Assembly (NCBI RefSeq): GCF_021869535.1
Contig: NW_026262701.1
Location: 22,010,001-22,074,000, forward strand
Direction of reading: 5' to 3'
Length of the DNA stretch: 64,000 nucleotides
Source: Mytilus californianus
Lineage: Eukaryota
A program made the position numbers and the translations under genes. Shown here piece after piece: positions 15,401 through 58,156 of this stretch. Numbering within the stretch: position 1 is the stretch's first letter; each line of letters starts with the position of its first letter. The notes beneath the pieces were generated by a model. It ran no database searches, was not told the DNA's origin, and saw nothing but the letters and a program-made list of their open reading frames with translations.

Positions 15401-18400
15401 GTACATACTGTCTTGAGTGAAGTATCTTATCTGTAATTTTGTTGATGAGTGTCTCTTGTCCATTGGAATCATGTATACTAGATTCAAATCTTTCTATTTC
15501 TTCTTCTGCTAGTGGACCAATAATATCTTCTAGTTTTCTTCTTAACACCTTAACAAATTCATGTCTGTAAAATAAATTTCTTAATTAAAAGCCTATTTTG
15601 AAAATTAGTTTCTTGTCAAAACAAAATAATTGAAATAAAAGTAAGCATTGTAAGTGAAATGTATCAAACGTTAAATATGAACAATAAATTATAAACCAAA
15701 TGTATATGTATATGTATATTCATAATCATTTCACTGTTTCACATATTATAAATATAACTGTTAACACAGAGATATGTCTCACCTTTCTGAATTTTGATAA
15801 TTCAAATGTTGAAATTAAAATAGCAATACTTTAACATGTAAGTTATGCAAATATTCAAAGTCAATGAACCATGACTGAAGGTACATGGCTAAACAATCTC
15901 CATGGAAATGAGATGTGCCAATGCTAATACAACTGCATACCAAATACCATTGACTTATCATAAGTCTTTCCCTTTAAACAGACCTAAACACAAACATTAA
16001 CTTGTAAACTATGTAAAAGTTTCAAAGTCAATGAACCATGATGAGGGGGTGGGGTTATATAATCTCCATGGAAACGAGACTTGCAAATGCCAATAAATTT
16101 GCATACCAAATATCATTGACTTAACATTAGCGGTTCATCTTAAACTGATCTAATCACAGACTAATACATGTAAACTAAGCAAAAGTTTCAAAGTCAATAG
16201 ACCATGACTGAGGGGGCAGGGCCAAATATTCTCCATGGAAATGAGATGTCCTAATGCTTATACAACTGCATACCAATTAACATTGGCCTACCACTAATGG
16301 TTCCCCTTGAACTGAACTAATCACAAACTAATACATTAAAACTAAGCAAAAGTTTCAAAGTCAATAGACCATGACTGAGGGGGCGGAGCCAAATAATCTC
16401 CATCGAAATGAGATATGCCAATGCTTATACAACTGCATACCAAATATTATTGACCTACCACTAGTGGTTCCCCATAAATTGACCTAATCACAAACTAATA
16501 CATGTAAACTAAGCACAAGTTTTAAAGTCAATAGACCATGACTGACGTGGCAGGGCCAAATAATCTCCATGGAAATGAGATGTGCCAATGCTTATACAAC
16601 TGCATACCAAATATCATTGACCTACCACTAGTGGTTCACCATAAACTAGACCTAATCACAAACTAATACATTGTTGACACAGCCACTGACGCAGGAAACA
16701 GCATACATGTACCTATGTCTCGCTATTTGACTCCGTCAACGCAGACAATAAACTGTAATGTTTCTTCAGGAATAATTTAATAACTTAATATAATACACAT
16801 TCATTCACAATGTACAGGTATTTATATGTGTGCCTTTTATGTTAATTTAATTATTCTATAGAAATCACAATGCAAACCTTCTGTATATATTTCATGGTTT
16901 CATTAAAATCAATTGGAAACTCATTTCATTGAGAGCATTAAAAATACAGTTTTTTTTTGAGCTGATAGTACAAAATGATATTACAAAGAAATTATGTGTC
17001 CATATCTTACATAGAATGGCGAACGTAGATACAAGTATCTTGTCTTGGGGAGGGATAAATCCTACTTTGTAAAGAATCACTCTGATTCAAACAAAAAATT
17101 CTCTGAAACTGACATTATCAAGATGCTTGATTTCTTGATTGACAACATATTTGTTATGTTTGGAGGACGTGTTTTTCAACAGACTGTCAGAATTCCAATG
17201 GGAACCAATTGTGCCCCTCTTCTTGCCGACTTGTTTCTTTATTATTTTGAGGTTGACTTCATACAGGAACTTCTTAGGAAGAAAAATAAGAAGTTAGCAA
17301 TATCCTTTAACACTACGTTCCGCTATATAGATGATGTTCTCTCACTAAATACATGTAATACAAAATTTGGTGACTATGTTGAACGAATCTATACCATCAA
17401 ACTAGAGATAAAGGATACTACAGATACAGTTAAGTCTGCCTCATATCTTGACTTACATCTAGAAATTGACAATGAGGGTCGGTTCAAAACAAAACTTTAC
17501 GACAAAAGAGATGATTTCAGCTTCCCAATTGTGAACTTTCCATTTCTATGTAGCAACATTCCAGCATCACCTGCATACGGAGTATATATCTCCCAATTGA
17601 TACGATATTCCTGGGCTTGTGTTTCCTATCATGATTTCCTTGATAGAGGATTGCTGCTCACAAGAAAGCTATTAAACCAAGAGTTCCAAATGGTGAAGTT
17701 GAAATCATCCCTTCGTAAATTTTACGGACGCCATCACAAGTTGGTTGACCGTTATGGAATAACCGTTTCACAGATGATATCAGATATGTTCCTTATGTCG
17801 TAACTACAATACCCTTCCCTTTTCACGAATGTGACTTACCGAATTAGACTATTTACCGGATTTATAATAACATAAGTAACACGACTGGTGCCACATATGG
17901 AGCAGGATTTGCTTACCCTTCCAGAGCACCTGGGATCACCCCAGTTTTTGGTGGGGTTCGTGTTGCTAAGTCTTTAGTTTCTATGTTGTGTCATCTGTAC
18001 TATTATTTGTCTGTTTGTCTTTTTATTTTTGGCGATGGCGTTGTCAGTTTGTTTTCGATCTATGAGTTTGACTGTCCCTCTGGTATCTTTCGTCCCTCTT
18101 TTACATAAATTAGCTGTGTATAAGATAGATAACCAAAGTAAGAAAACTGGGGAAACAGTCAGACTAATCCACCTAACTTTATAAACTTATTTTAGTTAGC
18201 AGATATAAGGATCAGGTACCACAACCCATTTTCTGCATCCATTACTATTTAGACTAAGCTAATGTCAAGAAAATAAGTAACCTTATGATGTCTGACTAGT
18301 TATAGATTCATCAATTTTCTGTTGTGTAACACACTATTCTATTTTTTATTGTTGCAACCTTCTTTTCTTTATGGTCCAAACCCATATAGAGCTACACTAA

Positions 18401-32939: not shown

Positions 32940-33142
32940 ATAAGTCCACAAAAAGACGTGTCACTCTACTCGGACACATCATTTTGACTTCGAACCGACT
33001 AGTCTTTGCTTTTACTTTTAAATGCCGCGTGCTTATCGGAGAAGCAGCAACTACCAATTTTCAAGGTTTTTTGGGGGGAAGTTGATCTAGCATAACCTCT
33101 CGCATTCGAGGCAGTCATGCTACCATGAAACCACCGGTGGTA
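32940..33142 (-). mobile_element. Degenerate tRNA-derived SINE
   Basis: Minus strand begins with a decayed tRNA-like head (ggtggtttcatggtagcatgactgcctcgaatgcgag), followed by body sequence ttggtagttgctgcttctccg. Confidence 0.55.
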
Positions 33143-33982
33143 CTCAGGAAATTGCATCATAGGTGATACAAGATCTCAATACGTATATATTTACTACTTA
33201 TATTGTTTTAAAATATAGTTCTATGTACAAATCTCCCACTAAAGTTTATGACAAAATAAGAACGGATCCAATTATGACTGTTAATTAGGTAAAATAAATT
33301 AAAATGTTACTGAGAGACATGTAGTAGAAAAAGAATGAACGACAAAATGAGGAAAGCAGGGAATTAGCCTTTTTGAAAGGCAATGCATAACAAATGAAAT
33401 CTTCCAATATAAGTCTTTAAATAATGACGACAAAGTGGGCATAAATTGATAATGGATTTTTGTTTTATCGGCTCTTCAATTTTTCTTTTGAGTTTTGGAT
33501 TTTCAAATATTCAACCCAAAAACTGCCGTGATATGATTACTAGGAAGAACGACTTCAGTGTTCACTGCACAAGTTTTCATGCCGCCTTAACAAACAGGTC
33601 AATCGTTAGAATGTATCAACTTCTAAACTTACAAGTGACATTTTAGTTCTATCCTTGAATCAACTTATCTACTTCGTATGATCCATCCGAGATAATTTAC
33701 GGTTATGTCATATTCTTGGATAGTTACCCGTACAACTGAATATGAATCTGATATCATGACGTATGATGCATGCATAGCAGAAAATGATTATCCTCAGTGA
33801 CTACGCGACTGTTCTCGATTAGTTTGGAGTTCATGCAACTCAGATTATTTTTACACGAATGTTTGTCTATTTTTACTGGGATAAATGTTAATTGAACATC
33901 GGTATACTACCTTTGTTTTAAAATGTTTTTGTATAAAGTTTTATTTTTCAGCGTCTTTAGATTTTCTTGCAAGACAGACAAA

Positions 33983-36900
33983 ATGTCAGATGGAGATACT
34001 GAAACAGACGATAAGTATGACCGGTCGTTTGAAGTCTCCACCTTTGTCAACAAAGACATTTGGGATGATGGGGATAAATATATTGGACACTCGATTGATC
34101 ATAAAGATAAAGAGCTAAATGAGAAAACACAAGATGACAAGTATGAGCCCCCGTATGGAAATGAAACGAAAGACTTCAACGACACGAGCTTTTCGGATGA
34201 AGATATACAAAATGGGTCATCTTCGCTGTCTGATGAAGAATCTTCCGATGAAAATGAAACCCTGAAACCTTTTGAAAATGAGACAGAGGGAACTTCAAAA
34301 GCAAATAACATACAAAGACAACAATTAAATAGAGCACCAAAGGGGGTTAGATGCTACAAAATGAAATATATGAAAGGGAAATCTGATAGAAAATTAGCAA
34401 AACTTGAAGGAAAATATAAATTTCTCCAAAAGGAAGTAGACAGCATTACCAAATTCAAGCTACAAATGATACAATACTATAGAAATCAGCAGCAACAATT
34501 TAAGGGCAATACAGATCTGGACGAAAATTTGAAGAACCATAATCTTTTCCATAAATCCCTCATTAAAAGAAACAGAAATAAAAATGAAGTGGCTGAAGAA
34601 ATGACAATGAAGGGAAGATTTAATGAAGTTACAGAATTAATACTACCAGAGAAGATTCCAATTAAAAGGAGTAAGTTAATGCAATATACCATCAGCGAGA
34701 GCGAATATGGATTTATTCATATACTGCGTGTAAAGAAATATCAAGATATTGAACAGTCCATTATTATGTTTTTCAATATAAAAACATGTCCACAAAATGA
34801 CAGATTCCTTTACTCGGTAGTCAGCAATCACCAACAACATGAACATCTTCCCTACAACCACCAACAGGCAGATTTACACCACACCAGTTGCAATCAGGAA
34901 ATCATTGCCGTTGCTGCTCAAGTTGCGGCTGTTATATCAACTGACCATGCCAGCGTTGATCTCAACCAACTAGTTCGATCTTATTGGTATAGCATCAATG
35001 TGAGTGAACGTACAAGAGATCGAATGATATATGAATCGGTAGTTTTCATAGACAAGCACCAGTCTTACGGTGTTATATTAATATTTCGATTAAGGAAGTA
35101 TTCGTCTGGTAACACCAAATATGACTTGACGTGGAATGTAATCCAAAAAACCCAGAACGCTTTGAGCACGAATTCGGCAAGCTTAAGTCTTTTTGAAGAC
35201 ATCGGAGCTTTAATCAGCACTTGTAGCGGCATTTGGAGGATACGGAACGGTACCTATGCGTTTGTGGAATCGGGTTCTGTTTTGTTTGTTCTTGAAGTTA
35301 TGCCACAACACCTACAGCTTCAAGAACAGACGAAGCAAGCTGATGGTTTGATGTGTCACGTTATCCAAACAACCCTGAACGATTCGAGCACGACTTTAGT
35401 AAGCTCAAGTCTATTTGAAGACATTGGTGTTTTGATCAGCAATTTTAGCGACATTTGGAGGATACGGAACGGTACAAATGCGTTTGTGGAGTCGGGTTCT
35501 GTTTTGTATGTTCTTGAAGTTATGCCACAATACCTACAGTTTCAAGAACCGACGAAGCAAGCTCATGGTTTGACGTGGAACGTAATTCAAACAACCCAGA
35601 ACACTTCTAGCACAAATTCAGTAAGATTGAGTCTTCCTGATGACATCGGAGCTTCGATCAGTACTTGTAGAGGCATTATGAGGAATGCGTCTGTGGAATC
35701 GGGTATTGTTTTGCCTGGTTTTGAAGATATGATACAATACCCACAGCTCCAAGAAACGACGAATCAATATAATGACTCAGCAAACAGTAAATATACAGGA
35801 CAGATTGCTATACAATCAACTTTACAACTTAATGTCTTAAAGTCACACAAAAGAAAAAGGGTAATACACTCAGTTGTCCAATCAGAACAGAATAAAACCA
35901 AGCCAGTACCATTGCAAAACAGCAAAAGAAACAAAGCAAGCAAATTAAAAGCTTCAAGAAAAGCGAGACACAGCCTCGCTTATTGCTTAAGGACTCGAAC
36001 AGCAGAAACGTTTTCATCAATCTCTAATGATAAAACAAACACTTTGAAAACTCTACGATCACAGAGGTACAAAACAAGTAAGAAGCAAAATAGCAGAAGC
36101 CCGAACGTTAAAATGAGAATACCAAGTATAGGTCCATCGAAGACCCAACTAAACTTATCAAGAGCATATCTATTACATATGCAAGAAACTCACTCCAGAA
36201 ATCAAAGAACAGATACGAACAAAACCCGCTGCCATTTTTTGAGAAAAGGGTCACCTTATATGAGTCGAAATAAAGATCAGTCACCAAAGCATCATGAAGA
36301 CGGATATAATAAAGGAAACGTATGCCATGTAAATGGGGGTATACATACCAGTATTAGTAATGAAAACCAAATGTTTGGATATGCAACTGGGAACGTTTAT
36401 CATCAACGCATATGTGAAGAAGATATTTGTCTTTATGAGGATGAAGCTATTGGTCAGACCATACATGATTCAATAAGCGGTAAAGGAATTATTCCAACCG
36501 GAATCGAAGTAAGAACCGAAATTCACATAATTCACAACAGACTTGTGCATGATCAACTCAATCATCTCCGACATCAAATCAACTCAAATAGGATGCATAA
36601 TGTACAGCCGACAATGGAACAAGATAACAGATCAGAAATATGTACAACGTTAACATCATACGACAAAAGTAAGCACTTATTGAGTTTATTTACATGTTAT
36701 GCCTAAAAAAAAACTACCGAAAACAACAAGCATCAATATTTTTACAAGGCTTTAAATTTATTACAGTAAGTTAAATGAATATACAGTATATATATGAAAT
36801 TATACCGATGATTTATTTGATCAGAACAAAACAGAATTGATGCACACATGCTAACGGGTTTCCTTTTAGAAACATTTACCACATGTTCAAGATCCCGAAT

Positions 36901-39900
36901 GATCTTAATTTTAAATGTTAATACAAATTATAAATTATGTTGTCGTGATTGTTAGTGTTTATGTTATCTAAGTTCAAAGCAAAAAAATATGGAATAAGAT
37001 TTTTATAATTCCATTTTAAAACATTATTCTCGTAATTATCAAAACTTTATTTTTCTACTGCACGAATTACATTTCAGATAGAATTCGAAATTGTCGACCA
37101 TTTCAAGCTAATTTCGAGATACCTTTAGCAGGTGGAACCAGTGCACTAATTGTCCTGAAAAATACATGCTGTGTTGATGGATTTCTTCTGATGATTTATG
37201 TTTTATTGGAGGAAAATCTAGCATTAAGAACACAGTTTGAACATTCCGAACATGATTTGCACAAGGTTTGTTGCCTTTATATTTTTAGAAACACATTTTT
37301 TCCTCTTTTTATTCAAGTAATCTAAATTTATAGTAGTTAATTTTTCATGTTCACAAAACCTTAAATAAAAATGAAAAAGATATATTAAAGTAATGATTTA
37401 GCATAAAAAATGTTTTAGATATACCATCAAATATGGAAGGAGTTCAAAGTTGGGAATTTTGGAGATGGCAAGGTTGCGTGGGGTAAATATGGAGGTTACA
37501 TCGCAGATATCGATGCAAATGGTGCGAAAACTGAGAAAATAATAGATATAATTGGAACAGAAAATGAGAGAATATTTTGTGTGCTCGGCAAACATAGATT
37601 TCCTCTTCGTATACATTGCTCACTTGTTAATGGTGATGTTTATTTCACTACGCAACTCTACAACGTTTTACCCGTGTATGAAGTTCCAGGGTGAGTTTAT
37701 AGATTTAATTGACATCTATTGATATGAAAGTAGCATTGTAGACAAGACAGAAAAAACATTTTTTTTTATTAAAGTCTAACCATTTGTTACGGATAAAAAA
37801 AATACAAAAAGCACACACGATACAACAGAGCCACTATATACAGATTTACAACATACACATATATATCAAATATTATGAGTTGAACAAAAAACTGAGAAAT
37901 CATTTATTTCGCTATCGATTATACCTGTGAAAACAGATACAAAATACTTTTACCAAATTGCAGATTTTAACATACCAACAGACGTCTCATTGATACAACT
38001 AGACCAAGACTCAAGCAAGTTATATCTTTGTAAAACTCTATGCTAATAATAGACATTTTCGGAAACTATAGTTCACAATAACTTTTAAGTTGACGATGAT
38101 AATTACAGGTACACTTACCTGTGGGTCATCTCAAAATACACTATGTCATGCTTAACAAGCGAATATAATAAGATAACAGATTTTTATTCCGAATGAAATC
38201 AGCTACTTCTTAGTCGTATTTAATTATAGAATAACTAATTGAAGAATTCAAAAATAGAAAAATATTCAACTAGTGACAAAGCAACTTTACGAATGCGCGT
38301 GTGTTAATTATCATTGTTGTTCTGTCACAAGTTGAATATTTTTCGATATTTGAATTCTTTGATTTCTTATTCTTTTTATTGCATTGAAAACGAATTTTTT
38401 TAATTCGAATTAAAGTAGAAAGTTTAAGGATCAATATCTTTTTCTACGCATTCACAATTTGTTTTGATGTGGCGTCATCAACAACTAATTACAATACATA
38501 TTGTTGTATGACGTAAGAGGAGTGAAATAAGAAGTATTTTCGGGTTTTATTTAACTTGGAAAACCCGGAAATTTATTGCACTATATAAGTCATTATCTGT
38601 TTTAATCGTTTGAATCTGAAGAAAGCTGACTCTCAAGCCTTTAATATTTTAGAAATTTTCTTAGCCATGAATTTCTCATATATCAACAGTTTCCTTTTAC
38701 ATGTAACAAGCTGCATCAATGATATGCTTTTTTGGATCAGTTTTTTTTTGTCGTTTGAGCACTAGGTTCGGGCTGTTGCTCGTCAGATAGATGGTTATTC
38801 GCCTTTTTGTAACAATGCAGGACGTCTTTATTCGTCATATTTTTTTCCATCCACGGATAACAGTTCCAACAAGGGATTTTCTCCCTGAACCATCACTTCA
38901 ACTTTAGATATAGAATTGTAGACGATGCTGTAGCTACTTGTGAGGGGAACGATGTTCTCAAATGTTTTCCCGTCACAGGTACATCAAACAACCGGAGAAA
39001 CAGCCAAAACCTTTTTAGACATATTGAAACAAATTGGAAATGATACGTTCATGCGTATCACTGATAGGCCACACAAACTTATCCTAGAAATAATGTTGTT
39101 CATGCTTTAGTTCAGATCATATCCGTGATTTCATATGATTAACGTAAATTTTTACGTAAGTGGAATGAAATTTATAAGCAAATAACCGTGTTTTTATCAA
39201 CATTTTCATAATCTGGTACAGTGACCATCTCTTAATGAATTAAGAGCACAAGTGAAAAAAACTGCTAATGGCAGTGGATGCTCTTTACTAAAATTCAACG
39301 GAAATTTGCAGGTCACTAGTTTGTCCCAAGAAGCTTTAATTTTCGGGACATTGCAATGCTATGGTCAAGTGGTAGAAATACTGAGCTTGACTCTCTTAAA
39401 AAGATTGTTTATGGTAAAATATGTCCTAATAAATATCCTTTTGTGGCACCCTATAAACAACAACTATTACTGTGAAAACCTGACAATTTAAAGAGAGGTG
39501 TCGACAAATTAATAATTCTATCAAAGAATACAGAGTTACTGCTGAGAAAAAAATTGAAGAGTTATGCTATTTGTATTAGGTATTTTTGTCATATAGCTCT
39601 TCAACTGTTTCGGTACTTATACATCCCTCGGATTTCAAATGTTTGGCTTTGAGCGTTCCAGATGAAGGTAAATCCAGAAACGCGCTTCGGTCGCATAAAA
39701 TTATTAAACGTGTTGTTTTCAATTTTTTATAGAGTTGTGCTTCTTTTGTATGCAGGCGTCGAGACTTGTTTAGTTGATTTCATATGAAATAAATCGTATG
39801 AATGCGGTATTAGCTTTTCAATTCATCAACATTTGTCTACTTTGAGATGGCCCCTATATAATAATCTGTAAATGTCATCATCAATGTAAATATAAAAGTT

Positions 39901-40619
39901 TTAAACAGTTTTCTGAAAAGTCTAATAGACATTACTTAGATTTGTTAAATGAGACGTGAAAGTGAGGTTTCTCAGATGGAAACATTTATGTCGTTGTTTT
40001 TTTTTTTTTATAATTTGTTCGAACGTAGTGTTTTGATATTAGTTTGAATAAAGCTAAACTGTTAAGAAATAGACAATGTTTTGAAAGTAAACATGGGTTA
40101 TGAGACTTTTGGGGTAATCTTTTTATAACTTGAACAGTAACCTTCAATCATATTTTAAAAGTGTAATTTAGTAAAAATCTGATCTCACTACAAAGATTTA
40201 ATTGCAACACTAACAGTCTAGTAACAGTAACACCATTATGTATCAAGTTTGGCAATATTATTTATTTTCTCGATTATGACAAATATCATTGATTCATTAA
40301 ATTCGTAGAAATAATAAAGTAGTTGTATTTTCTATTGATAGAGAGCCTTTATGTGACACCATCAAAAGAGCTATTAACAAGTACCTAAAAAGAGATGATT
40401 TGCCCTGCTACAGTATCCATGGGTAGGTGTAGTTTACATTAAATTGAGCTTAGGGGTTCTGTTTGGATCTTCAAAATACCATTATTCAAATATTGCTACT
40501 CTTGAGGAATTTAATATCGATCACAAAATACATCATTATTTTTTCATATACAGGCAATAAAAATCTGTATAAGCCGGAGATCAGAAATTAAAGTTAATGA
40601 AACACTTTAGATGTAAGCA

Positions 40620-40669
<50 letters not shown>

Positions 40670-43600
40670 AGCTAATGATATTTCATTTTTTTTCATATCG
40701 TTTTTTTTTCATCGTCATGTATTGACATTGAACAGTTCTGTCTTATCTTTCGTGTCTTTATAAGTGCATACCGTACATACCACCCATTGTAATAGATACA
40801 TAATAAATACATAATTGCCTTTCCAAATTTTTAGTTTTGAGTGTTCCTCCTGAAGGTAAATTCAGAAATTAGCATTGAATGAATCAATTCTGTACTTTGC
40901 TATTGATTTTAGTAACATCTTCTGAAAATACCAGGACGAATCAGTGTCCTTGTGTATTTTTTACACGTCAATATAGCATTTGGTGTCTCTTTTTAGAATC
41001 ATCAAAGAAGAATGCAGAGGGAATTCGGTTCAAACATTGGTTGAACCACCACTCATTTTGCCAATTAATCTGTTCTTCTTGAAACATGGTAAAAAGAAAC
41101 ATTCAAGCGCTGAAATTCCTGAAATAGTGGAGTCCAATGAACATAGGTTACTTATCTATAATTCGTATAAAGTAGAAGATTGATGAAACAATTATAATTG
41201 AGTGAATGAACTAAAAAAATCAAAGAATACCGCTCAAACCGGTGCTAGGGGCCGTCTTTAACTTGCAGTGAGGTGAGAGTTGTTTTGCTCTGTGTTGAAA
41301 GCTTCACTGTGACTTTGAGATGAAGAACAGCAATAAAAGTGCTGTTCCTTTGCTTTTTGTGTTTTTCGCTGTGCACATACTGATTTTGTGTCATGGATGT
41401 ATACCCCATATCCTTTCTTTTCCATTAAATAAATAAGAAACTTGGGGGAAAATATTAAGCACATTAGATAATTCAAACGTTAAACAAACTGTCGATGTCA
41501 CAATGCGTATGTTGAGTTTTGAAAATCTTTAAAATTACCTTAAACATGTTGCAAATTTCCCAATGATTCATTTCACTGAAGAGGTCAAAATTAGAAAGTT
41601 GATGAAATCTAGAATTTCGGGAATTTAAATAATTATAATTTAAATTATACATTTCGACAATTTCACATATAAATTAAAATTTTATTCATCGCTTTCGTTT
41701 TCATTTTTATCGAAATTCTACACGTTTTAAATATATATATATCATACCGTTTTCAGTGCCCACGACACGTGTTTCTCGTGTTTCTGAAATTACCTACTAA
41801 TACACCAGGTATACGTGAGCACAATAATTTTAAAAGAAATAAACGTTTCATAGCACGAAATCCTAAAGGGTCTCCGAAACAGAACAAAAAATCTGTTCAG
41901 GTAAGAACTACCTAAGAAAATTTCAACATTAATTTCACAAAATTTATAAACTGAAAATTTAAAAAACGAATGGCCACTGTAGATTAAAATATTTTGTTGT
42001 AGGAAGGGATAAATAATAGTTTGTGAAAAAAAATCCTCTGAAAGTGACACTAAATGTTATCAAGATGCTCTATTGTTTCATGACATTATATTTGTAACGT
42101 TTGGAGGACGTGTTTTTCAACAGAAAATCGGCATTCCTATGAGAACCAACTTTGTTTGTATTGTTGACTTGTTCCTTTATTCATATGAAACATTGTTCCT
42201 TTATTCATATGAAACATAGTTCATATATGAGCTTCTCAGAACGAATAAATAGAAGCTAGCATTATCCTCCAACTCCACGTTCCGCTATATAGATGATATC
42301 ATCTCACTAAATAATGTTGTACGTATCTATCCCATCGAATTTGAAATAATAAAGGATACCACAGGTAAAGTTAGTTCTGCCTCATATCTTGAATTACATC
42401 TAGAATTTGACAATGAGGATCGGTTGAGAACAAAACTTTACGACAAAAGTGATGATTTCAGTCCCTACTATGAACTTTTCATTTCTATGTAGCAACACTC
42501 CAGCAGCGCCTGCATTTTAAGTATATATCGGATGCCGCCATGTGTTGGTTGACTGTTATGGAATATCTGTGTCACATATGGCTGTGGATGTGTTTCAATT
42601 GTCGCTGCTACAATCAAGTCCTCTTTTCCTTGATTGTGACATAATCAATGAATAAGTCTTATCGCCAAATTTTTACACTCCCTTGTTCGCCTCTCAAAGA
42701 TAAAATGTATCATTTAAATCATACCACTATCAAAACATTGGCTAATGGGTGCATCGTAATGTTGGGACTGACAGTCCAACGTCAGCAGTAGTATTAAACG
42801 ACACGTGTTTCTAGTACCACATTTTGATTAGTGCAGCTTTGTTTCATAAAACAGAATGACAAACGCAGATACACATTTATTGTTTGTTTTTTTTTTTGGC
42901 ATCATCTATATAGCAGAAAGTGAAGTTATGGATAACGCTATATTCTTTTTATTCTTCCTAAGAAACTTGTGTATTGAGTCAGCCTCATATGAATAAAGGA
43001 ACATGTCGTCAAGAAGATGAGCACAGTTGGTTTCCATGGGAATGTCGATTGTTTGTTGAAAAACACGTTACAAATATGCTGTCAATCAAGAAATCAAACA
43101 TCGTGATAATGTCGATTTCAAGAAATGTTTTGTATGAATCAAAGTGATTGTTTACAAAGTACGATTTATCCCACGATAAATTAAGATACTTTTGTCTATT
43201 TACTTTTATAAATTGTAACTTGGATGGAGAGTTGTCTCATTGGCACTCATACCACATCTTCCTATATCTATGTTGACCATTTCTTTTTATGAAACAAAGC
43301 TGGTCCAATTCTTTCAATTTATCTTTTAGGTTGGAATTAGGAATACTTGTGTAAAGGATTAGGATATATTTTAATTTGTACCAAGTCAGGAATATGACAG
43401 TTGTTGTCCATGCGTTTGATGTGTTTGTGGTTTTGATTTTGCCATTTGATTAGGGACTTTCCGTTTTGGATTTTCCTCGGAGTTCAGTATTTTTGTGATT
43501 TAACTTTTTAACGGATGACCATGTACATGTTGCACTTATCGTAACTGTAGTTCCACCCTCTTTTCCTTGGTTGTGACATTACCGGATGAACTTATCACCG

Positions 43601-44123
43601 TATTTTACTTGAAATGCGTAACACGACTGTTGTCACTACGGGAGCAGGAACTGATTACCCTTCCAATTGAGTTCATTCCCGGTTTTTGGTGGGGTTCGTG
43701 TTGCTCAATCTTTAGTTTGTTGTATACTGTTTAGTTATAGTTGTTTGTCTTTCCGTCGCTTATTTTTATGTAACCTTTTAAAACATCCTTGGTATTTTCT
43801 CTTTCTTTTCAGGTATTTATATTTCAAGAAATACAAAACATGTTGTAAACTAATTTAGGAAACACAGTTTTTAGTGAAAATTCTAGTATTTGCATTAGCA
43901 GAAAGAATATATTTTTTTTTTCTATTTCCGGTAATTCTTTTTTTTTTATAGGTATGAGCTTTACTTGGTCCGTTTCTTCATGGATGGAATAAATCATTTT
44001 GTTGACAAGATAAAGATTCATGGAACATGGACATTTTATGATGATTGTCGAGAAAAACTGTATCATTTTGATGTGGAACCTGAATCAGTTCAATTGTCCA
44101 GTTGCTATTTTGTAAAAGTATAG
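33983..44123 (+). CDS. Six-exon gene, about 1182 aa: long novel N-terminal region (acidic, coiled/basic, 74-aa repeats, K/R/S-rich) plus a C-terminal C14orf28-like USP-type cysteine protease domain
   Basis: Exons 33983-36668 (acceptor at 33951, donor A|gtaagc), 37078-37265, 37419-37690, 40342-40422, 40997-41146, 43952-44123 (TAG). All phases match (1,0,2,2,2) with no internal stop. Motifs: LKNTCCVDGFLLMIYVLLEEN (Cys box; resembles recalled C14orf28 [21 protein letters not shown]), IIDIIGTENE, CRGNSVQTLVEPPLILPIN, NHFVDKIKIHGTWTFYDD (His box), LSSCYFVKV*. Confidence 0.82.
35126..35770 (+). repeat. Coding tandem repeat: 222 bp (74 aa) x about 2.9 inside the giant exon
   Basis: Units start at 35126, 35348, 35570 (LTWNVIQ / LMCHVIQ / LTWNVIQ); the third unit has an in-frame 5-aa deletion. 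Confidence 0.92.
39560..39730 (+). mobile_element. Retrozyme/PLE pseudo-LTR fragment with a mutated type I hammerhead (39653-39694)
   Basis: gcgttc-CAGATGA-aggtaaatcca-GAAA-cgcgcTTC-ggtcgc. Confidence 0.6.
40622..40667. repeat. (GA)n microsatellite
   Basis: Direct reading. Confidence 0.95.
42030..42535 (+). mobile_element. Degenerate Penelope-like RT fragment with stops and frameshifts
   Basis: tttggaggacgtgtttttcaacag, ttccgctatatagatgat, gcctcatatcttga, aaaactttacgacaaaag shared with the 17 kb copy. Confidence 0.85.
42895..43190 (-). mobile_element. Degenerate Penelope-like RT fragment, inverted relative to 42030-42535
   Basis: Minus strand reads like the YFVK..IIxMFDFLID..IPM.TNCAxLL..FCYIDD region. 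Confidence 0.75.
43535..43790 (+). mobile_element. Penelope-like 3' UTR fragment
   Basis: ggagcagga...ttacccttcc...tttttggtggggttcgtgttgct matches 17900-17970. Confidence 0.7.
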
Positions 44124-44356
44124 GATGGCATATGCATTGTAACTAATTTAAGATGTAGATACCATATAATTGAACTTTGAGATTTTTGAGTTATACAAGC
44201 GTGGTTCTGTTTTTAATGTGTATTACGTTCAAGATTGTTTTCGGAAAATCAGCATGCATTGATAAAATTCATTTTACATCTTACTGATGAAGGAAATCTG
44301 TTATTTGAAATATATATTTATGCTTGTATTTACTTTTTACTTTTATATACATATGT

Positions 44357-45319
44357 TGTGTACAAGTTATCATTTTGTACAAATTATAATTTGTATTTTA
44401 ACTTTGTACAAATTGTTGTTCGTCCAAACATTGCTTGTACAAATTACAATTTGTACAAAATTTGACTAGAATTCACTTATAACTTGTACAAAAATTTATA
44501 ACATTGACTTTGTTATTAAAAAAGTCATTTAGACACACTATAGATTTTCTATTTTAATGACCACACAGTAAACCTTATTTACAAAATACAAAAATAGTTC
44601 TGTACCATTTGTTTGAGCATGCGAGAGAATTATGGGATCGGGAATTACACAACATCTTTTGCTTTTTTACATTTAAACAAGGAATTATTTGAATCTGAAA
44701 TAATTTTGAATTCTGGGAAATTGATAAGAAATGTATTCTGAAAACTAACCCAACTTTAGCGCAGGGTTAAGGTTCAAGTTACTTTCATTGATATTTCAGT
44801 AGGAACTAACTAATCCCATTTATCCATGCATGCATGGCTAACCCTCCTTAATTGGGTTAGTTTTTATCATACATTTTCCAGAATTCAAAATTATTCCTAC
44901 ATCTGTTCTACATCTGTTCTAATGCGGTACCAACAATCCTTGGTGAATACATGATTGTGCTTTCATGTACTATTCTCTGCTAGGTCCAGAATTTCTTGGA
45001 CAAATTTATCCTGCTGATCAACAATGCTGGCCATGTTTACACTATATCACAACTTGTTATAACAAATGACCCCAAAATAATAAACAGTCCAAAAGTGTTC
45101 AAGAAGAGTTGAATGCAAGGCAATTAAAATGTATTACTGTTAAAAATATATTGAAGGCCATCCTTTTTATCATGTTAAATTATCATAAATCCTTTGTCAT
45201 GTTTGTACAAGTTATAAGTGAATTTTAGTCAAATTTTACAAGCATTTTTTGGACAAATCATAAGTTGTACAAAGTTAACATACACATTACAATTTGTACA
45301 AAATGATAACTTGTACACA
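44357..45319. mobile_element. Fold-back element with about 140-bp TTGTACAA-rich inverted arms
   Basis: tgtgtacaagttatcattttgtacaaat... / ...atttgtacaaaatgataacttgtacaca; no exact TSD found. Confidence 0.7.
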
Positions 45320-54727: not shown

Positions 54728-57700
54728 ATGTCATCTAAAGATCCAGCTATGATTGCTGCAATCGACTTTGGTACTGTGTATTCTGGGTACGCCTTTTCTA
54801 TCATTGATTCTTCCCCAAAAAGGCCATTTACTATTAATGTGAATCAAGCGTGGAATGCTGGAGGACACAACTTGCTTTCCATTAAAACCCCGACGACTCT
54901 TTTACTTGACGCTAGCAAACAGCTTGTGGCTTTTGGGTACCAGGCTGAAAATAGATATACGGAATTAGAAATGGATGGTAAAATTGACGGCTATTATTAC
55001 TTTCATAGATTTAAAATTAAATTGCTTGAAAAAGAGGTAAGTTTCATCTGCTATTCTATTATAATTAAGATTGCACAAAATCCGATTGTTTCATTCGTAA
55101 ATAAGTGAGATACTGTATTTCATTTTTTTTTTGTAAAATTGCAAAAAAAAAAAGACTAAGATAATATGTTTCAGATAAGTTCATTTATCAGACAGTGCTA
55201 TAGTAGCGCTGGGTTGTTTCCACTGCTGGTTGACTGTTAGTCCCCGAGGTTATCATTAGCTCAGTAGTCAATAACTCGGCACTAACATGATTTATTGCAT
55301 ATTATTCTTGAATAAAAGCTCCGTTGATAAATTAAGAAACTACTGAGAAACTATAAAGTTCCAACTCCTTCAGGCAAAGTTGACTTTAGATGTATTTGAC
55401 AATTCTTTTTATATAGATATAAGAAGATGTGGTATGAGTGCCAATGAGACAACTCTCCATCCAAGTCAAAATTTATAAAAGTAAACCAATATAGGTCAAA
55501 GTACGGTCTTCAACACGGAGCCTTGGCTCACACCGAACAGCAAGCTATAAAGAGCCCCAAAATGACTAGTGTAAAACCATTCAAACGGGAAAACCAACGG
55601 TCTATATATAAAAAAACGAGACGTCCCTTTTGTTTATGTAGCTCCTCATGTCATATAGCTCTTCACGTGTTGTTTACATTGTTGTTGGCATTCAAAAGTT
55701 TGTGTTTGAGCGTTCCTGATGTTGGTCAATCCAGAAAAGCTCTTCGGACGCACGAGGGATACAAATACAGAGGACATTGTATACCGAGCTCTTTACAAGT
55801 ACTTATATCAACAATATCATTATTTTTTTTTTGTTGTCAATAAATCTGTTGAACCAAGAGGGAAAAGTTTAAAAAGTTAAACTCGTTTGTATTTTGATAA
55901 TATTTTGAATATCATGTTTGGTGTTTTCCAGAATTTGTCATCTGATACTGAACTAGCAGACATTAAAGGAAAACCAGTTCCAGCAAAAGAAGTATTCGCT
56001 TTATCAATACGATTTTTAAAACAGCATTTGATTAACTCTTTATCGAGACAAGGTGTTGATGTGGCTGACTTCAGAATCCAATGGGTTCTAACCGTGCCCT
56101 CTATTTGGTCAGATGGTGCAAAGCAATTCATGCGGCAATGTGCAGTGAAGGTAAATTAAGTCATCATAGATATTAGGCTTAAAATTGTTGCGCCAGATGC
56201 ACGTTTCGTCTACCAAAGACTCATCTGTGACGCTCGAATCAAAAAAGTTTAAAATGACAAATAATATACGAAGTTGAAGAGCCCATACAGTTGCTCCTTA
56301 TCAATTTTAACTGCTTCTTGTTATCTCTGAATTACATACCAAGTGCAAGACTTTGCAGTATCTAAATACAGTTTTTGCCACCCGTATTCAAATAAAAATG
56401 AATGTTGTATTCTACTAAAACATTTAAAGTAAGCATGAAGATTCAACATGCCAAAAAATGTCCATTTATTATGTAATTTATCTTTAATTCAAAGTGTCTC
56501 AATTTGTAAGAGAAGTAAAGTCGGGTTAGATAACAAAAGCATATCCAACACTATTCTAATGTATTTAGGCAGGTATACCAAATGACAGTCTGGTGATTTC
56601 CCTCGAATCAGAAGCAGCATCAATATTCTGCCATCATATTTCATCAAACCTGTCAGTCGGTGCTAATACAGGTGTTTTGTCATCGAAGAAAGGAATACAA
56701 TATATGGTAGTCGACATGGGAGGTACGATTTGCTATATATATATACAGTAAAAATGTGCACAGGAAATGTCGGGCAAAAGGTGAAAGAAAAAAGTTATTG
56801 ATTGTTTTAAATGTCACAAGAAAATTATCGTAACAGAGAAAAACAATCAATATGTTTTTTTTTTCTATTTTTTCCTTTTGAATGGCTCTTATAATTTAAA
56901 TCTCCAGAGTGATTATTGGCAAAATATAAGAACATCGGTGTGACAAAAAAAAAACAAAAACATAAAAGGGAAAGAGTCAGGTGTTCATTGTCAAAATTTG
57001 TCTTTGTTTGTTACAAGTAAAACAGGCTTACACGTATTTAAAATTTAATTTATTTTTTTGTTGGTAAACATTACTCTATGACATTGCTTGTTTAATCGCA
57101 GGTGGAACCAGTGATATAACAGCTTTAGAAAACATCGGCAAAAACCAATTAAAAGAAATTTGCAGGGCAAGTGGTGCTGATTGTGGCGGTATTGCCGTGG
57201 ACAATGCATTCTATACAATTTTTATGCACATCGTCGGACAAGCTGTTATTGATGATTTGACTAATTCAAGCCCTTCAGCTTACTTGGATTTGTTCAGAGA
57301 ATTCGAATGCGTAAAGCGATCTTTAACTCCCGAACAAACAGGAAAAATTACCATGTCGATTCCTTTTCTCACCTTGACGCAAGTTTGTGAGAAACATCAC
57401 AATAAAGATTTTGTAAGCTTATTAAAAGCGTCTAATTATAACCATCAAATGACGATTGTCAACGACAAATTACGAATTGAAATTGATTTATTAAAACTGT
57501 TGTTCAAACAAACTACAGACAAAATTGTCAATCTGATAAAAGATAACTTGCACCAGGTACAAAATAAACGAGCGGTCAATGTCATTTTAGTTGGAGGGTT
57601 CTCCGAAAGTCTCATTGTGCAACATGCAATAAAGTCTTCTATTCCATCTCATAATATCATAGTTCCAAACGAAGCTACTCTCGCAGTTTTGAAAGGAGCA

Positions 57701-58156
57701 GTCATTTTCGGAACTGATCCAAATGTTATCGTATCTCGTGTTGTACGTTATACATATGGATTTCAAGTTTCCAACGATTTTGATCCGAAATTACACGAAT
57801 TCCTTCGACAAGTTGAAGTTGACGGTTTACAACTTTGCGAGAAAGTATTTGAAAAGTTTATGGTGATCAATTCAACAGTAAGTCTTGGACAGAAAATTAA
57901 GGAAACTTTTACGACCACCAAAAAATTCCAAGAGCTTCACTATCTACCTCTCTTCACTTCAACGAAGAAAGAACCAGGGTATACTGATGACAAAACATGT
58001 AAACATGCTGGGAATGTGGTCGTTAGAATTCCGAACCCAACTGAAAAATATCGTGATATAGATGTCACTATTTGTTTCGGACATACTGAACTTCAAATAG
58101 AGGCTGTTGACGTTGAATCGGGTAATATGTGTCAAACGACGTTTGAATATGTATGA
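54728..58156 (+). CDS. HSPA12: Heat shock 70 kDa protein 12-like (HSPA12A/B family), 578 aa, 4 coding exons
   Basis: Exons 54728-55036, 55932-56150, 56569-56722, 57102-58156, with GT-AG and phases 0,0,1; total 1737 nt. Motifs: AAIDFGTVYSGYAFS, KTPTTLLL, WVLTVPSIWSDGAKQFMRQCA, LESEAAS, YMVVDMGGGTSDIT, GGIAVD, LVGGFSES, FGHTELQIEA. Confidence 0.93.
55190..55800 (+). mobile_element. Retrozyme-type repeat in HSPA12 intron 1 with hammerhead at 55710-55751, interrupted by a SINE-like insert (55412-55621)
   Basis: gcgttc-CTGATGT-tgg tcaat cca-GAAA-agctcTTC-ggacgc; 5' part matches 51460-51550 inverted. Confidence 0.65.
56185..56285 (-). mobile_element. Second-family retrozyme fragment with a mutated hammerhead (56191-56232), HSPA12 intron 2
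   Basis: Minus strand: cgtca-CAGATGA-gtct ttggt agac-GAAA-cgtgcaTC-tggcg. Confidence 0.65.

What the first reader, a model, noticed from the sequence alone, without database searches (positions are those of the whole stretch)
33983..44123. Hidden six-exon gene: C14orf28-like USP-type protease fused to a 900-aa novel N-terminus
Seen in sequence: the 927-aa ORF has a donor (A|gtaagc) at 36668, and five small downstream exons, mostly absent from the ORF track, splice in frame to a TAG at 44123. They supply KNTCCVD, then NHFV, then WTFYDD. Established: USP catalytic domains use an N-x-C Cys box and an H...W..(F/Y)DD His box; human C14orf28 as recalled is a short stand-alone protein of about 310 aa with [11 protein letters not shown] and HY...W..YDG. 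Inference: this is a lineage-specific, probably catalytically competent DUB-like protease of about 1182 aa whose N-terminus comes from one 2.7-kb exon. I know of no description of such an architecture.
Basis: partly seen in the sequence, partly recalled or inferred. Interest (0 to 1): 0.78.

Follow-up and report, generated by a model that had tools for sequence, protein, structure and literature searches.

The report
Mussel USP-like protease gene, long tail
This is a real, spliced and weakly expressed mussel gene, already listed in RefSeq as an uncharacterized protein, whose last quarter is a ubiquitin-protease-type (USP-fold, C14orf28-like) domain with its catalytic residues intact and whose first 895 residues are a fast-evolving, repeat-bearing stretch with no detectable relatives outside mussel-like genomes; it is correct but fairly ordinary.

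Summary
The six coding exons (33983-36668, 37078-37265, 37419-37690, 40342-40422, 40997-41146, 43952-44123, + strand) all have GT-AG borders. Their phases fit and they end at TAG. The product equals RefSeq [quoted passage not shown], 1182 aa, so the gene is hidden only from a prokaryote-style ORF list.

Transcript-like contigs and one RNA read show junctions 36668>37078, 37690>40342 and 40422>40997. The other two junctions rest on the RefSeq model and on matching GT-AG exons in M. trossulus.

The C-terminal 293 aa fold as a USP domain. All top PDB matches are USPs (Foldseek E about 2e-8; VIA-align Z 11-13). The best ESM Atlas matches, by features and by shape, are clusters named C14orf28. A family profile puts Cys926, His1141 and Asp1156 on the USP46 Cys and His boxes. 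Human C14orf28 was already classed as a papain-like deubiquitinase domain in 2023 (PMC10318531).

The N-terminus has no family, no fold and dN/dS 0.73, against 0.36 for the protease domain. The architecture recurs in other Mytilus and in one unidentified metagenome organism.

Protease activity is untested. Verdict: new member of a known kind, modest interest.

The parts
33983..36668 (+). Coding exon 1: 895 codons plus 1 base. It holds an acidic, Ser-rich start (residues 1-130), a Lys/Arg-rich stretch (131-230), a repeat region (about 384-600), a strongly basic stretch (621-780, net charge +30) and a conserved last segment (about 798-895).
   Evidence: RNA-type coverage and the spliced contig are. 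dN/dS against M. trossulus is 0.73.
35126..35684 (+). In-frame tandem repeat inside exon 1: 222 nt (74 aa), 2.5 copies, 82% alike. It is specific to M. californianus. M. trossulus duplicated a different, neighbouring unit.
   Evidence: (Tandem Repeats Finder) and the alignment of the three Mytilus N-termini.
36669..37077 (+). Intron 1 (409 nt, GT..AG), which joins the giant exon to the protease exons.
   Evidence: joint 36668>37078 in a contig of run X2, with 67 nt on the shorter side.
37078..37265 (+). Coding exon 2 with the Cys box LKNTCCVDGFL. The codon of the candidate nucleophile Cys926 is 37167-37169.
   Evidence: It aligns to the GNTCY box of USP46.
37419..37690 (+). Coding exon 3: helices after the Cys box and the first half of the fingers-like insertion.
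   Evidence: The donor joint 37690>40342 is seen in X9, X1 and X2.
40342..40422 (+). Coding exon 4 (27 codons).
40997..41146 (+). Coding exon 5, with the CRG remnant of the zinc-ribbon-like fingers.
   Evidence: Joint 40422>40997 is in X1 and X2.
43952..44123 (+). Coding exon 6 with the His box NHFV...WTFYDD. The His1141 codon is 43995-43997, the Asp1156 codon is 44040-44042, and the TAG stop is 44121-44123.
   Evidence: It aligns to GHY...W..FDD of USP46.
38086..39876 (.). Two very high-copy repeats inside intron 3 (about 38086-38682 and 39479-39876). They are not part of the gene product.
   Evidence: summed contig depths reach 63,000 and 522,000 in the DNA-type run X7, against about 21 for the flanks.

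Best explanation
Shown:
- This is a single-copy, spliced, weakly transcribed nuclear gene of the mussel Mytilus californianus (RefSeq LOC127701415). It has six coding exons and a 1182-aa product.
- Residues of about 905-1182 form a USP-fold papain-like cysteine-protease domain of the C14orf28 (DRIP1)-like kind.
- Cys926, His1141 and Asp1156 are conserved in all relatives recovered that cover those positions.
- The domain is under purifying selection (dN/dS 0.36).
- The first 895 residues come from one exon. They evolve nearly neutrally (dN/dS 0.73) but stay open. They carry species-specific tandem duplications and have no recognisable family or confident fold.

Inferred:
- The domain cleaves ubiquitin or a ubiquitin-like modifier from substrates, by thiol attack of Cys926 activated by His1141 and Asp1156.
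- The fingers-like insertion holds the modifier.
- The long, mostly disordered N-terminus targets or regulates the enzyme. Its acidic CK2-like start, coiled-coil-like basic stretch and strongly basic, NLS-like region 621-780 would suit this. A nuclear or chromatin location is a guess from composition alone.

The confidence given is for the whole statement. The gene model is about 0.95, the USP fold about 0.9, the C14orf28 kinship about 0.7 and actual protease activity about 0.5.
For: Gene model:
- Hand-checked GT-AG sites and phases.
- Identity with RefSeq protein P0001.
- Spliced contigs and a read at three junctions, with coverage confined to exons.
- Exon structure conserved in M. trossulus.

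Fold:
- AlphaFold2 model with pLDDT 70.8 and pTM 0.74.
- Foldseek: the listed 50 best hits are USP-fold catalytic or pseudo-catalytic (Pan2) domains, 357 hits have E <= 0.001, and the best is 2e-8.
- VIA-align Z 11-13 over 200-250 residues to USPL1, USP18, Pan2, USP35, USP30 and CYLD.

Family:
- The top ESM Atlas cluster by features is 'Chromosome 14 open reading frame 28' (score 0.96, 197 of 256 features shared).
- The same cluster is best by shape (TM 0.65/0.59, 239 residues aligned, rmsd 3.9).

Catalytic residues:
- A profile of 14 relatives hits USP46 (5l8h_A) at E = 0.0017. It aligns NTC with GNTCY and HF...W.FYDD with GHY...W..FDD.
- These residues are kept in every sequence of alignments A1/A2 that covers them.

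Selection and copy number:
- dN/dS is 0.36 for exons 2-6 and 0.73 for exon 1.
- This type is single copy in the genome.

Literature: human C14orf28 was classed as a papain-like deubiquitinase domain with a second fingers-like domain (PMC10318531).
Against: - No enzyme activity is known for any C14orf28-like protein. The vertebrate protein is described only as a predicted dopamine-D1-receptor-interacting protein (abstract of PMC10580352).
- The oxyanion-hole Asn that canonical USPs carry five residues before the nucleophile is a Val here, and that position is not conserved in the family. The role of that Asn is from my own knowledge of USP7 and USP2.
- Part of the Cys set of the fingers' zinc ribbon is lost in the Mytilus genes.
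- The model is of medium confidence. The insertion at model residues 95-160 and 178-200 has pLDDT 39-65, and I could not read coordinates to measure Cys-His-Asp distances.
- Single-sequence HMMER found no chordate C14orf28.
- Expression is low, about 1-2 reads deep in a 6% sample of run X9.
- A dN/dS of 0.36 is only moderate constraint.
Confidence: 0.6

Rival explanations
1. The USP-fold domain is a pseudo-protease or binding module, as in PAN2 or USP39. It would recognise ubiquitin, a ubiquitin-like fold or another partner without cleaving it. The protein would then act as a scaffold through its long N-terminus.
For: - Pan2 pseudo-ubiquitin hydrolases are among the best structural matches (Z 12.0-12.6).
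- The canonical oxyanion Asn is absent.
- Zinc ligands of the fingers are partly lost.
- The only function reported for the vertebrate relative is a protein interaction (abstract).
- Several USP-fold proteins of cluster IV are inactive (PMC10318531).
Against: - Known pseudo-USPs have lost the Cys or the His. Here Cys, His and Asp are kept wherever those positions are covered, both in the distant P0013/P0014 type (27-29% identity) and in the Mytilus orthologues and the M. galloprovincialis paralogue fragment P0007 (His and Asp; its Cys box is not covered).
- PMC10318531 counts C14orf28 among proteins that retain potential catalytic sites.
Confidence: 0.27
2. The model fuses two independent genes. 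In this reading an orphan, intronless, fast-evolving ORF (exon 1) is wrongly joined to a separate short gene of C14orf28 type (exons 2-6).
For: - The two parts evolve at very different rates (44% against 80% identity to M. trossulus; dN/dS 0.73 against 0.36).
- Some database models contain only one part: P0003 has 894 aa of exon 1 read through, and P0005 has 328 aa.
- Chordate C14orf28 is a short stand-alone protein. The Atlas cluster representative has 331 aa.
Against: - A 308-nt contig of a transcript-like run crosses 36668>37078 exactly at GT..AG.
- Exon 1 ends in phase 1, and the frame is completed only by exon 2.
- The donor and the phase are conserved in M. trossulus.
- A 704-aa ORF precedes the protease exons on the same strand in a distant organism, and its ends are colinear with those of Mytilus exon 1.
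- The segment just before the junction (residues 798-891) is the best conserved part of exon 1 in that comparison (E = 7e-6).
Confidence: 0.04
3. The gene is a domesticated descendant of a transposon-borne USP-like protease. On this reading the C14orf28-like domain entered mussel genomes on a DNA transposon. One copy acquired introns and a host N-terminus and now serves a host function. This concerns origin and is compatible with the best explanation for mechanism.
For: - The only other loci with this domain in the same genome, at least 8 of them, are degraded copies of a different type.
- The intact form of that type, P0014, is a 1313-aa intronless ORF lying between perfect 31-nt inverted repeats about 7 kb apart on a metagenome contig.
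- There is a precedent of deubiquitinase domains spread by DNA transposons and then domesticated: the VTD family (PMC9741609).
Against: - No transposase family was detected in P0014 by Pfam or NCBIfam. There is only a weak Atlas lead to ISAzo13 transposases (0.79).
- The target-site duplication is unclear.
- The window domain is only 27-29% identical to that type, and no tree with a root was built.
- The N-termini are unrelated.
Confidence: 0.25

Closest known systems
C14orf28 / DRIP1 (human Q4W4Y0 and its animal homologues)
   Same: - It is the best ESM Atlas match both by language-model features (0.96) and by predicted shape (TM 0.65/0.59 over 239 residues).
- The domain size is the same, about 280-330 aa.
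- It has the same NTC Cys box and H-[FY]...W..YD[DG] His box.
- It was classed as a papain-like deubiquitinase domain of the USP/CYLD cluster with an extra fingers-like insertion (PMC10318531).
   Different: - The chordate protein is stand-alone and short. The mussel protein carries 895 extra N-terminal residues.
- Sequence similarity is too low for single-sequence HMMER at E <= 1e-3 in a library of 1.8 billion proteins.
Canonical USP deubiquitinases (Pfam UCH PF00443, MEROPS C19), for example USP46, USP18, USP7 and USPL1
   Same: - The fold is the same (Foldseek probability 1.00; Z 11-13).
- A profile-to-sequence hit to USP46 aligns the catalytic Cys and His/Asp boxes.
   Different: - There is no hit to PF00443 or any other Pfam model, even at E <= 10.
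- Identity is 10-15%.
- The oxyanion Asn at position -5 is absent.
- The fingers region is divergent, with an incomplete zinc-ligand set.
- TM-scores to solved USPs are only 0.40-0.48.
P0014-type large proteins (1313 aa, metagenome; degraded copies in the mussel genome)
   Same: - The C-terminal domain is of the same family (27-29% identity, E = 5e-5 to 2e-5) with the same Cys, His and Asp.
- It is also a long protein with the protease domain at the extreme C-terminus.
   Different: - The N-terminus is unrelated.
- The gene is intronless and multicopy, most copies carry stops, and it is flanked by 31-nt inverted repeats.
- It is probably mobile, whereas the window gene is single-copy, has five introns and is orthologous across Mytilus.

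Membership tests
USP-fold papain-like cysteine proteases (cluster IV of PMC10318531; MEROPS clan CA, family C19-like) | USP catalytic-core fold: an N-terminal helix bearing the nucleophile, a fingers insertion, and a C-terminal beta-sheet bearing His and Asp. | tested here: met
   AlphaFold2 model with pLDDT 70.8 and pTM 0.74. The listed best Foldseek PDB hits are all USP-fold domains, best E = 2e-8. VIA-align Z is 11-13 over 200-250 residues.
USP-fold papain-like cysteine proteases (cluster IV of PMC10318531; MEROPS clan CA, family C19-like) | Catalytic Cys in an N-x-C box, and His...Asp in an H-[YF]...W..[FY]-D-D box, in that order. | tested here: met
   Cys926, His1141 and Asp1156 are present. 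A profile alignment places them on the USP46 boxes (E = 0.0017). They are kept wherever these positions are covered in A1 and A2.
USP-fold papain-like cysteine proteases (cluster IV of PMC10318531; MEROPS clan CA, family C19-like) | Oxyanion-hole Asn or Gln five to six residues before the nucleophile. | tested here: not met
   Position -5 is Val in the window protein, and Val or Lys in P0013 and P0014. The role of this Asn is from my own knowledge of USP7 and USP2 structures. Its absence lowers confidence in activity, not in the fold.
USP-fold papain-like cysteine proteases (cluster IV of PMC10318531; MEROPS clan CA, family C19-like) | Match to the Pfam UCH (PF00443), UCH_1 or Peptidase_C98 sequence models. 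| tested here: not met
   No such hit at E <= 10 for single exons or for the whole domain.
USP-fold papain-like cysteine proteases (cluster IV of PMC10318531; MEROPS clan CA, family C19-like) | Triad geometry and isopeptidase activity on ubiquitin or a ubiquitin-like modifier. | not testable with these tools
The complex prediction with mussel ubiquitin gave no verdict.
C14orf28 / DRIP1-like family | Closest relatives are C14orf28 proteins rather than canonical USPs. | tested here: met
   The Atlas cluster 'Chromosome 14 open reading frame 28' ranks first by features (0.96, against 0.92 for UCH clusters). It also ranks first by shape (TM 0.65, against 0.59 or less). A cnidarian 'C14orf28 homolog' cluster was hit as well. 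Cluster names are automatic.
C14orf28 / DRIP1-like family | Significant sequence similarity to a bona fide C14orf28 protein. | tested here: inconclusive
   phmmer over 1.84 billion representatives gave no chordate hit at E <= 1e-3. The word-based profile search gave none either. No C14orf28 sequence was available for a profile-profile test.
C14orf28 / DRIP1-like family | Short stand-alone architecture of about 300 aa. | tested here: not met
   The product has 1182 aa with an 895-aa N-terminal extension.

The most novel reading that the evidence does not exclude
C14orf28-like USP-fold proteases are, or once were, cargo of a family of TIR-bounded DNA transposons (the P0014 type). The mussel gene would then be an independent domestication of that cargo, and perhaps vertebrate C14orf28/DRIP1 too. 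That would make C14orf28 a second deubiquitinase-type family spread by transposons, after the VTD family.
Probability: 0.2. Interest if true: 0.6.

Novelty: new member of a known kind. Interest (0 to 1): 0.3.

Why it matters
C14orf28/DRIP1 is one of the last human USP-fold proteins without a known activity. A divergent invertebrate member that keeps Cys, His and Asp under purifying selection adds comparative support that the family is enzymatic. It also offers another protein for probe assays.

The mussel gene is a clear example of a conserved catalytic module attached to a fast-evolving, repeat-expanding, single-exon N-terminus.

Beyond that, it is an annotated and uncharacterized gene, not a new kind of system.

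Tried and rejected
- Pfam on each exon, on the whole C-terminal domain and on the full protein gave nothing above noise. NCBIfam gave nothing.
- A PDB sequence search with the single domain found nothing. With the N-terminus it found only noise.
- Word-based homologue searches with the domain, and with a six-sequence profile, found only Mytilus and metagenome relatives and no C14orf28.
- AlphaFold2 on N-terminal residues 205-625 with three orthologues gave pLDDT 25. This is uninformative, so I did not use it for fold search.
- Complex prediction of residues 900-1182 with the mussel's own ubiquitin (L026:1495-1722) gave a score of 0.00 and no verdict. It is evidence neither way.
- Rfam on 33000-45000 found no RNA family.
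- The idea that the Mytilus N-terminus derives from the P0014-type N-terminus was rejected, because BLASTP shows no similarity.
- The ISAzo13/Zator-like transposase lead for P0014 is only an Atlas feature score of 0.79, and Pfam and NCBIfam do not confirm it.
- Junctions 37265>37419 and 41146>43952 could not be tested with reads. There was one read-laying run of at most 6 kb, and coverage of exon 2 was thin.
The full-length sequence I used is database record P0001, which was returned by a search with exon 1 by reference.
Full report
**What is there**

The window is AT-rich eukaryotic DNA of about 32% G+C. On the + strand, the 927-codon ORF 33923-36706 contains the annotated start at 33983. It also contains a consensus donor, A|gtaagc, after 36668.

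Reading the sequence directly, I found:
- acceptors ending at 37077, 37418, 40341, 40996 and 43951;
- donors starting at 37266, 37691, 40423 and 41147;
- exon lengths of 2686, 188, 272, 81, 150 and 172 nt, giving phases 1, 0, 2, 2, 2;
- an uninterrupted frame of 1182 codons ending in TAG at 44121-44123.

**It is already annotated**

A word search with exon 1 by reference returned P0001, [quoted passage not shown]. It has 1182 aa and is 100% identical. Its C-terminus is exactly my hand translation of exons 2-6.

The gene is therefore hidden only from a prokaryote-style ORF list. RefSeq carries the same six-exon product. The following are related records:
- P0002, from M. trossulus, 1252 aa;
- P0004, from M. 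galloprovincialis, 510 aa, a partial model;
- P0005, from M. edulis, 328 aa, a partial model;
- P0003, an 894-aa read-through ORF of exon 1.

**Transcription and splicing**

One read-laying run on 35300-41250 showed coverage only on exons, plus two intronic high-copy repeats. This was so in a raw RNA-seq run (X9) and in two small transcript-like contig sets (X1, X2). A DNA-type run (X7) covered everything evenly, at a depth of about 21.

Joints at GT..AG were seen for:
- 36668>37078: an X2 contig, with 241 + 67 nt on the two sides;
- 37690>40342: one X9 read, plus contigs of X1 and X2;
- 40422>40997: contigs of X1 and X2.

That test is not met, so the model stands.

X9 reads lie with the first mate on the minus strand. 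For the usual stranded library, that fits an RNA from the + strand. Depth is low, about 1-2 in a 6% sample of the run.

Junction 37265>37419 was not covered, and 41146>43952 was outside the stretch. Both are supported indirectly. The M. trossulus gene (L019) has the same exon lengths (188, 272, 81, 150, 172 nt) with GT-AG borders, and its exon 1 has the same phase-1 donor A|gtaagt.

**The C-terminal domain**

No Pfam, NCBIfam or PDB sequence match exists for the single sequence.

HMMER against 1.84 billion representatives gave only 12 hits:
- Mytilus orthologues;
- exon-sized fragments of 43-57% identity;
- a 276-aa metagenome protein, P0013, at 27% identity;
- the C-terminus of a 1313-aa metagenome protein, P0014, at 29% identity.

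I made an AlphaFold2 model from a 14-row alignment (A2). It has pLDDT 70.8 and pTM 0.74.

- Foldseek against the PDB listed only USP-fold domains among its best 50 matches, including USP18, USP15, USP46, USPL1, USP1, USP7 and Pan2. The best E-value is 2e-8, with probability 1.00 and TM 0.40-0.48.
- VIA-align gave Z 11-13 over 200-250 residues.
- The Atlas shape search ranked the chordate cluster "Chromosome 14 open reading frame 28" first (TM 0.65/0.59, 239 residues, rmsd 3.9). It also hit a cnidarian "C14orf28 homolog" cluster.
- The Atlas feature search ranked the same cluster first (0.96, 197 of 256 features), ahead of the PF00443 clusters at 0.92.
- A profile of A2 hit USP46 (5l8h_A) in the PDB sequences at E = 0.0017. 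It aligned N-T-C on GNTCY and H-F...W-x-F-Y-D-D on G-H-Y...W-x-x-F-D-D.

The candidate triad is Cys926 (37167-37169), His1141 (43995-43997) and Asp1156 (44040-44042). These residues are present in every aligned relative that covers them.

The literature already classes human C14orf28 (Q4W4Y0) as a papain-like deubiquitinase domain of the USP/CYLD cluster. It describes a second fingers-like insertion and retained potential catalytic residues (PMC10318531).

There are cautions:
- The Asn that forms the oxyanion hole five residues before the nucleophile in canonical USPs is Val here. The role of that Asn is my own knowledge of USP7 and USP2.
- Part of the fingers' Cys set is lost in Mytilus.
- The insertion is poorly modelled.
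- I could not read model coordinates.
- No member of this family has a measured activity.

**The N-terminus**

No family, PDB relative or confident fold was found. The AlphaFold2 model of residues 205-625 gave pLDDT 25. By composition:
- residues 1-130 are acidic and Ser-rich;
- residues 131-230 are Lys/Arg-rich;
- residues 621-780 are strongly basic (net +30) with NLS-like runs.

A 222-nt unit is tandemly repeated 2.5 times in frame at 35126-35684. M. trossulus instead duplicated a neighbouring unit.

Against M. trossulus, exon 1 has dN/dS 0.73 (dS 0.38). Exons 2-6 have 0.36 (dS 0.28). Protein identity is 44% for the N-terminus and 80% for the protease domain. The N-terminus is thus coding, because it stays open for about 900 codons in several species, but it is weakly constrained.

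**How widespread it is**

The window type is single-copy in this genome. The fused architecture is not limited to Mytilus.

Metagenome contigs of an unidentified organism (L020-L025; 13 contigs in several samples) carry exon-2-, exon-3- and exon-5-like pieces at 34-49% identity. On L020 these are preceded, on the same strand, by a 704-aa ORF. The two ends of that ORF are colinear with the ends of Mytilus exon 1 (E = 0.002 and 7e-6).

The N-terminal search found only Mytilus proteins. That search scores only the 8000 candidates sharing most words, so absence elsewhere is not proven.

**A second type of the domain**

All other loci of this genome that match the family profile belong to the P0014 type. 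These include C1:9.22 Mb, C24:8.78 Mb, C93, C143, C110, C1:70.65 Mb and C24:10.09 Mb. They are mostly broken by stops.

On its metagenome contig, the intact 1313-aa intronless ORF lies between perfect 31-nt inverted repeats about 7 kb apart. Its N-terminus is unrelated to the mussel gene's. It has no recognised family and only a weak Atlas lead to ISAzo13 transposases.

This looks like a transposon-borne USP-like protease. A precedent for deubiquitinase domains carried by DNA transposons and later domesticated is the VTD family (PMC9741609). Whether the window gene derives from such an element is open.

**Verdict**

It overstates novelty, because the gene is annotated and the USP nature of C14orf28 is published. 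It also overstates catalytic competence, which is untested.

The most likely mechanism is a Cys926/His1141/Asp1156 isopeptidase acting on ubiquitin or a ubiquitin-like modifier. It would be targeted by a disordered, fast-evolving N-terminus. The main rival is a non-catalytic binding module.

The complex prediction with the mussel's ubiquitin gave no verdict and is not used as evidence.

I class this as a new member of a known kind, of modest interest.

Noticed in passing
L006:607-7631 (metagenome contig); G000 loci L007, L011, L012 and L014-L018: A 1313-aa intronless ORF (P0014) ends in the same C14orf28-like USP-fold domain. It lies between perfect 31-nt inverted repeats about 7 kb apart. The mussel genome holds at least 8 mostly degraded copies of this type, so it is possibly a DNA transposon carrying a deubiquitinase-like protease.
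   Followed up: partly
L020:1176-3290 and downstream (also L021-L025): An unidentified organism in several ENA/JGI metagenomes has a homologue of the window gene with the same layout. A giant first coding exon of 704 aa is followed by small protease exons, at 34-49% identity.
   Followed up: partly
window 38086-38682 and 39479-39876: Two very high-copy repeats lie in intron 3. Summed contig depth reaches about 63,000 and 522,000, against 21 for the flanks. They are also abundant in the RNA-type runs. No Rfam family matches them.
   Followed up: no
window 17045-17803 (+): A 252-aa ORF carries reverse-transcriptase motifs (YIDDVL), so it is a retroelement fragment upstream of the gene.
   Followed up: no
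window 54728-58156 (+): ORFs of 126 and 319 aa, the first opening with an AAIDFGTVYSGYAF motif that recalls an HSP70/HSPA12-type ATPase start. By eye, this looks like the neighbouring gene downstream.
   Followed up: no
window 33940-33982: A polypyrimidine tract plus cag acceptor-like site lies about 30 nt before the start ATG. This suggests an upstream non-coding 5' exon. The in-frame ATG at 33923 is probably not used.
   Followed up: no
window 40622-40668: A perfect (GA)23 microsatellite lies in intron 4.
   Followed up: no
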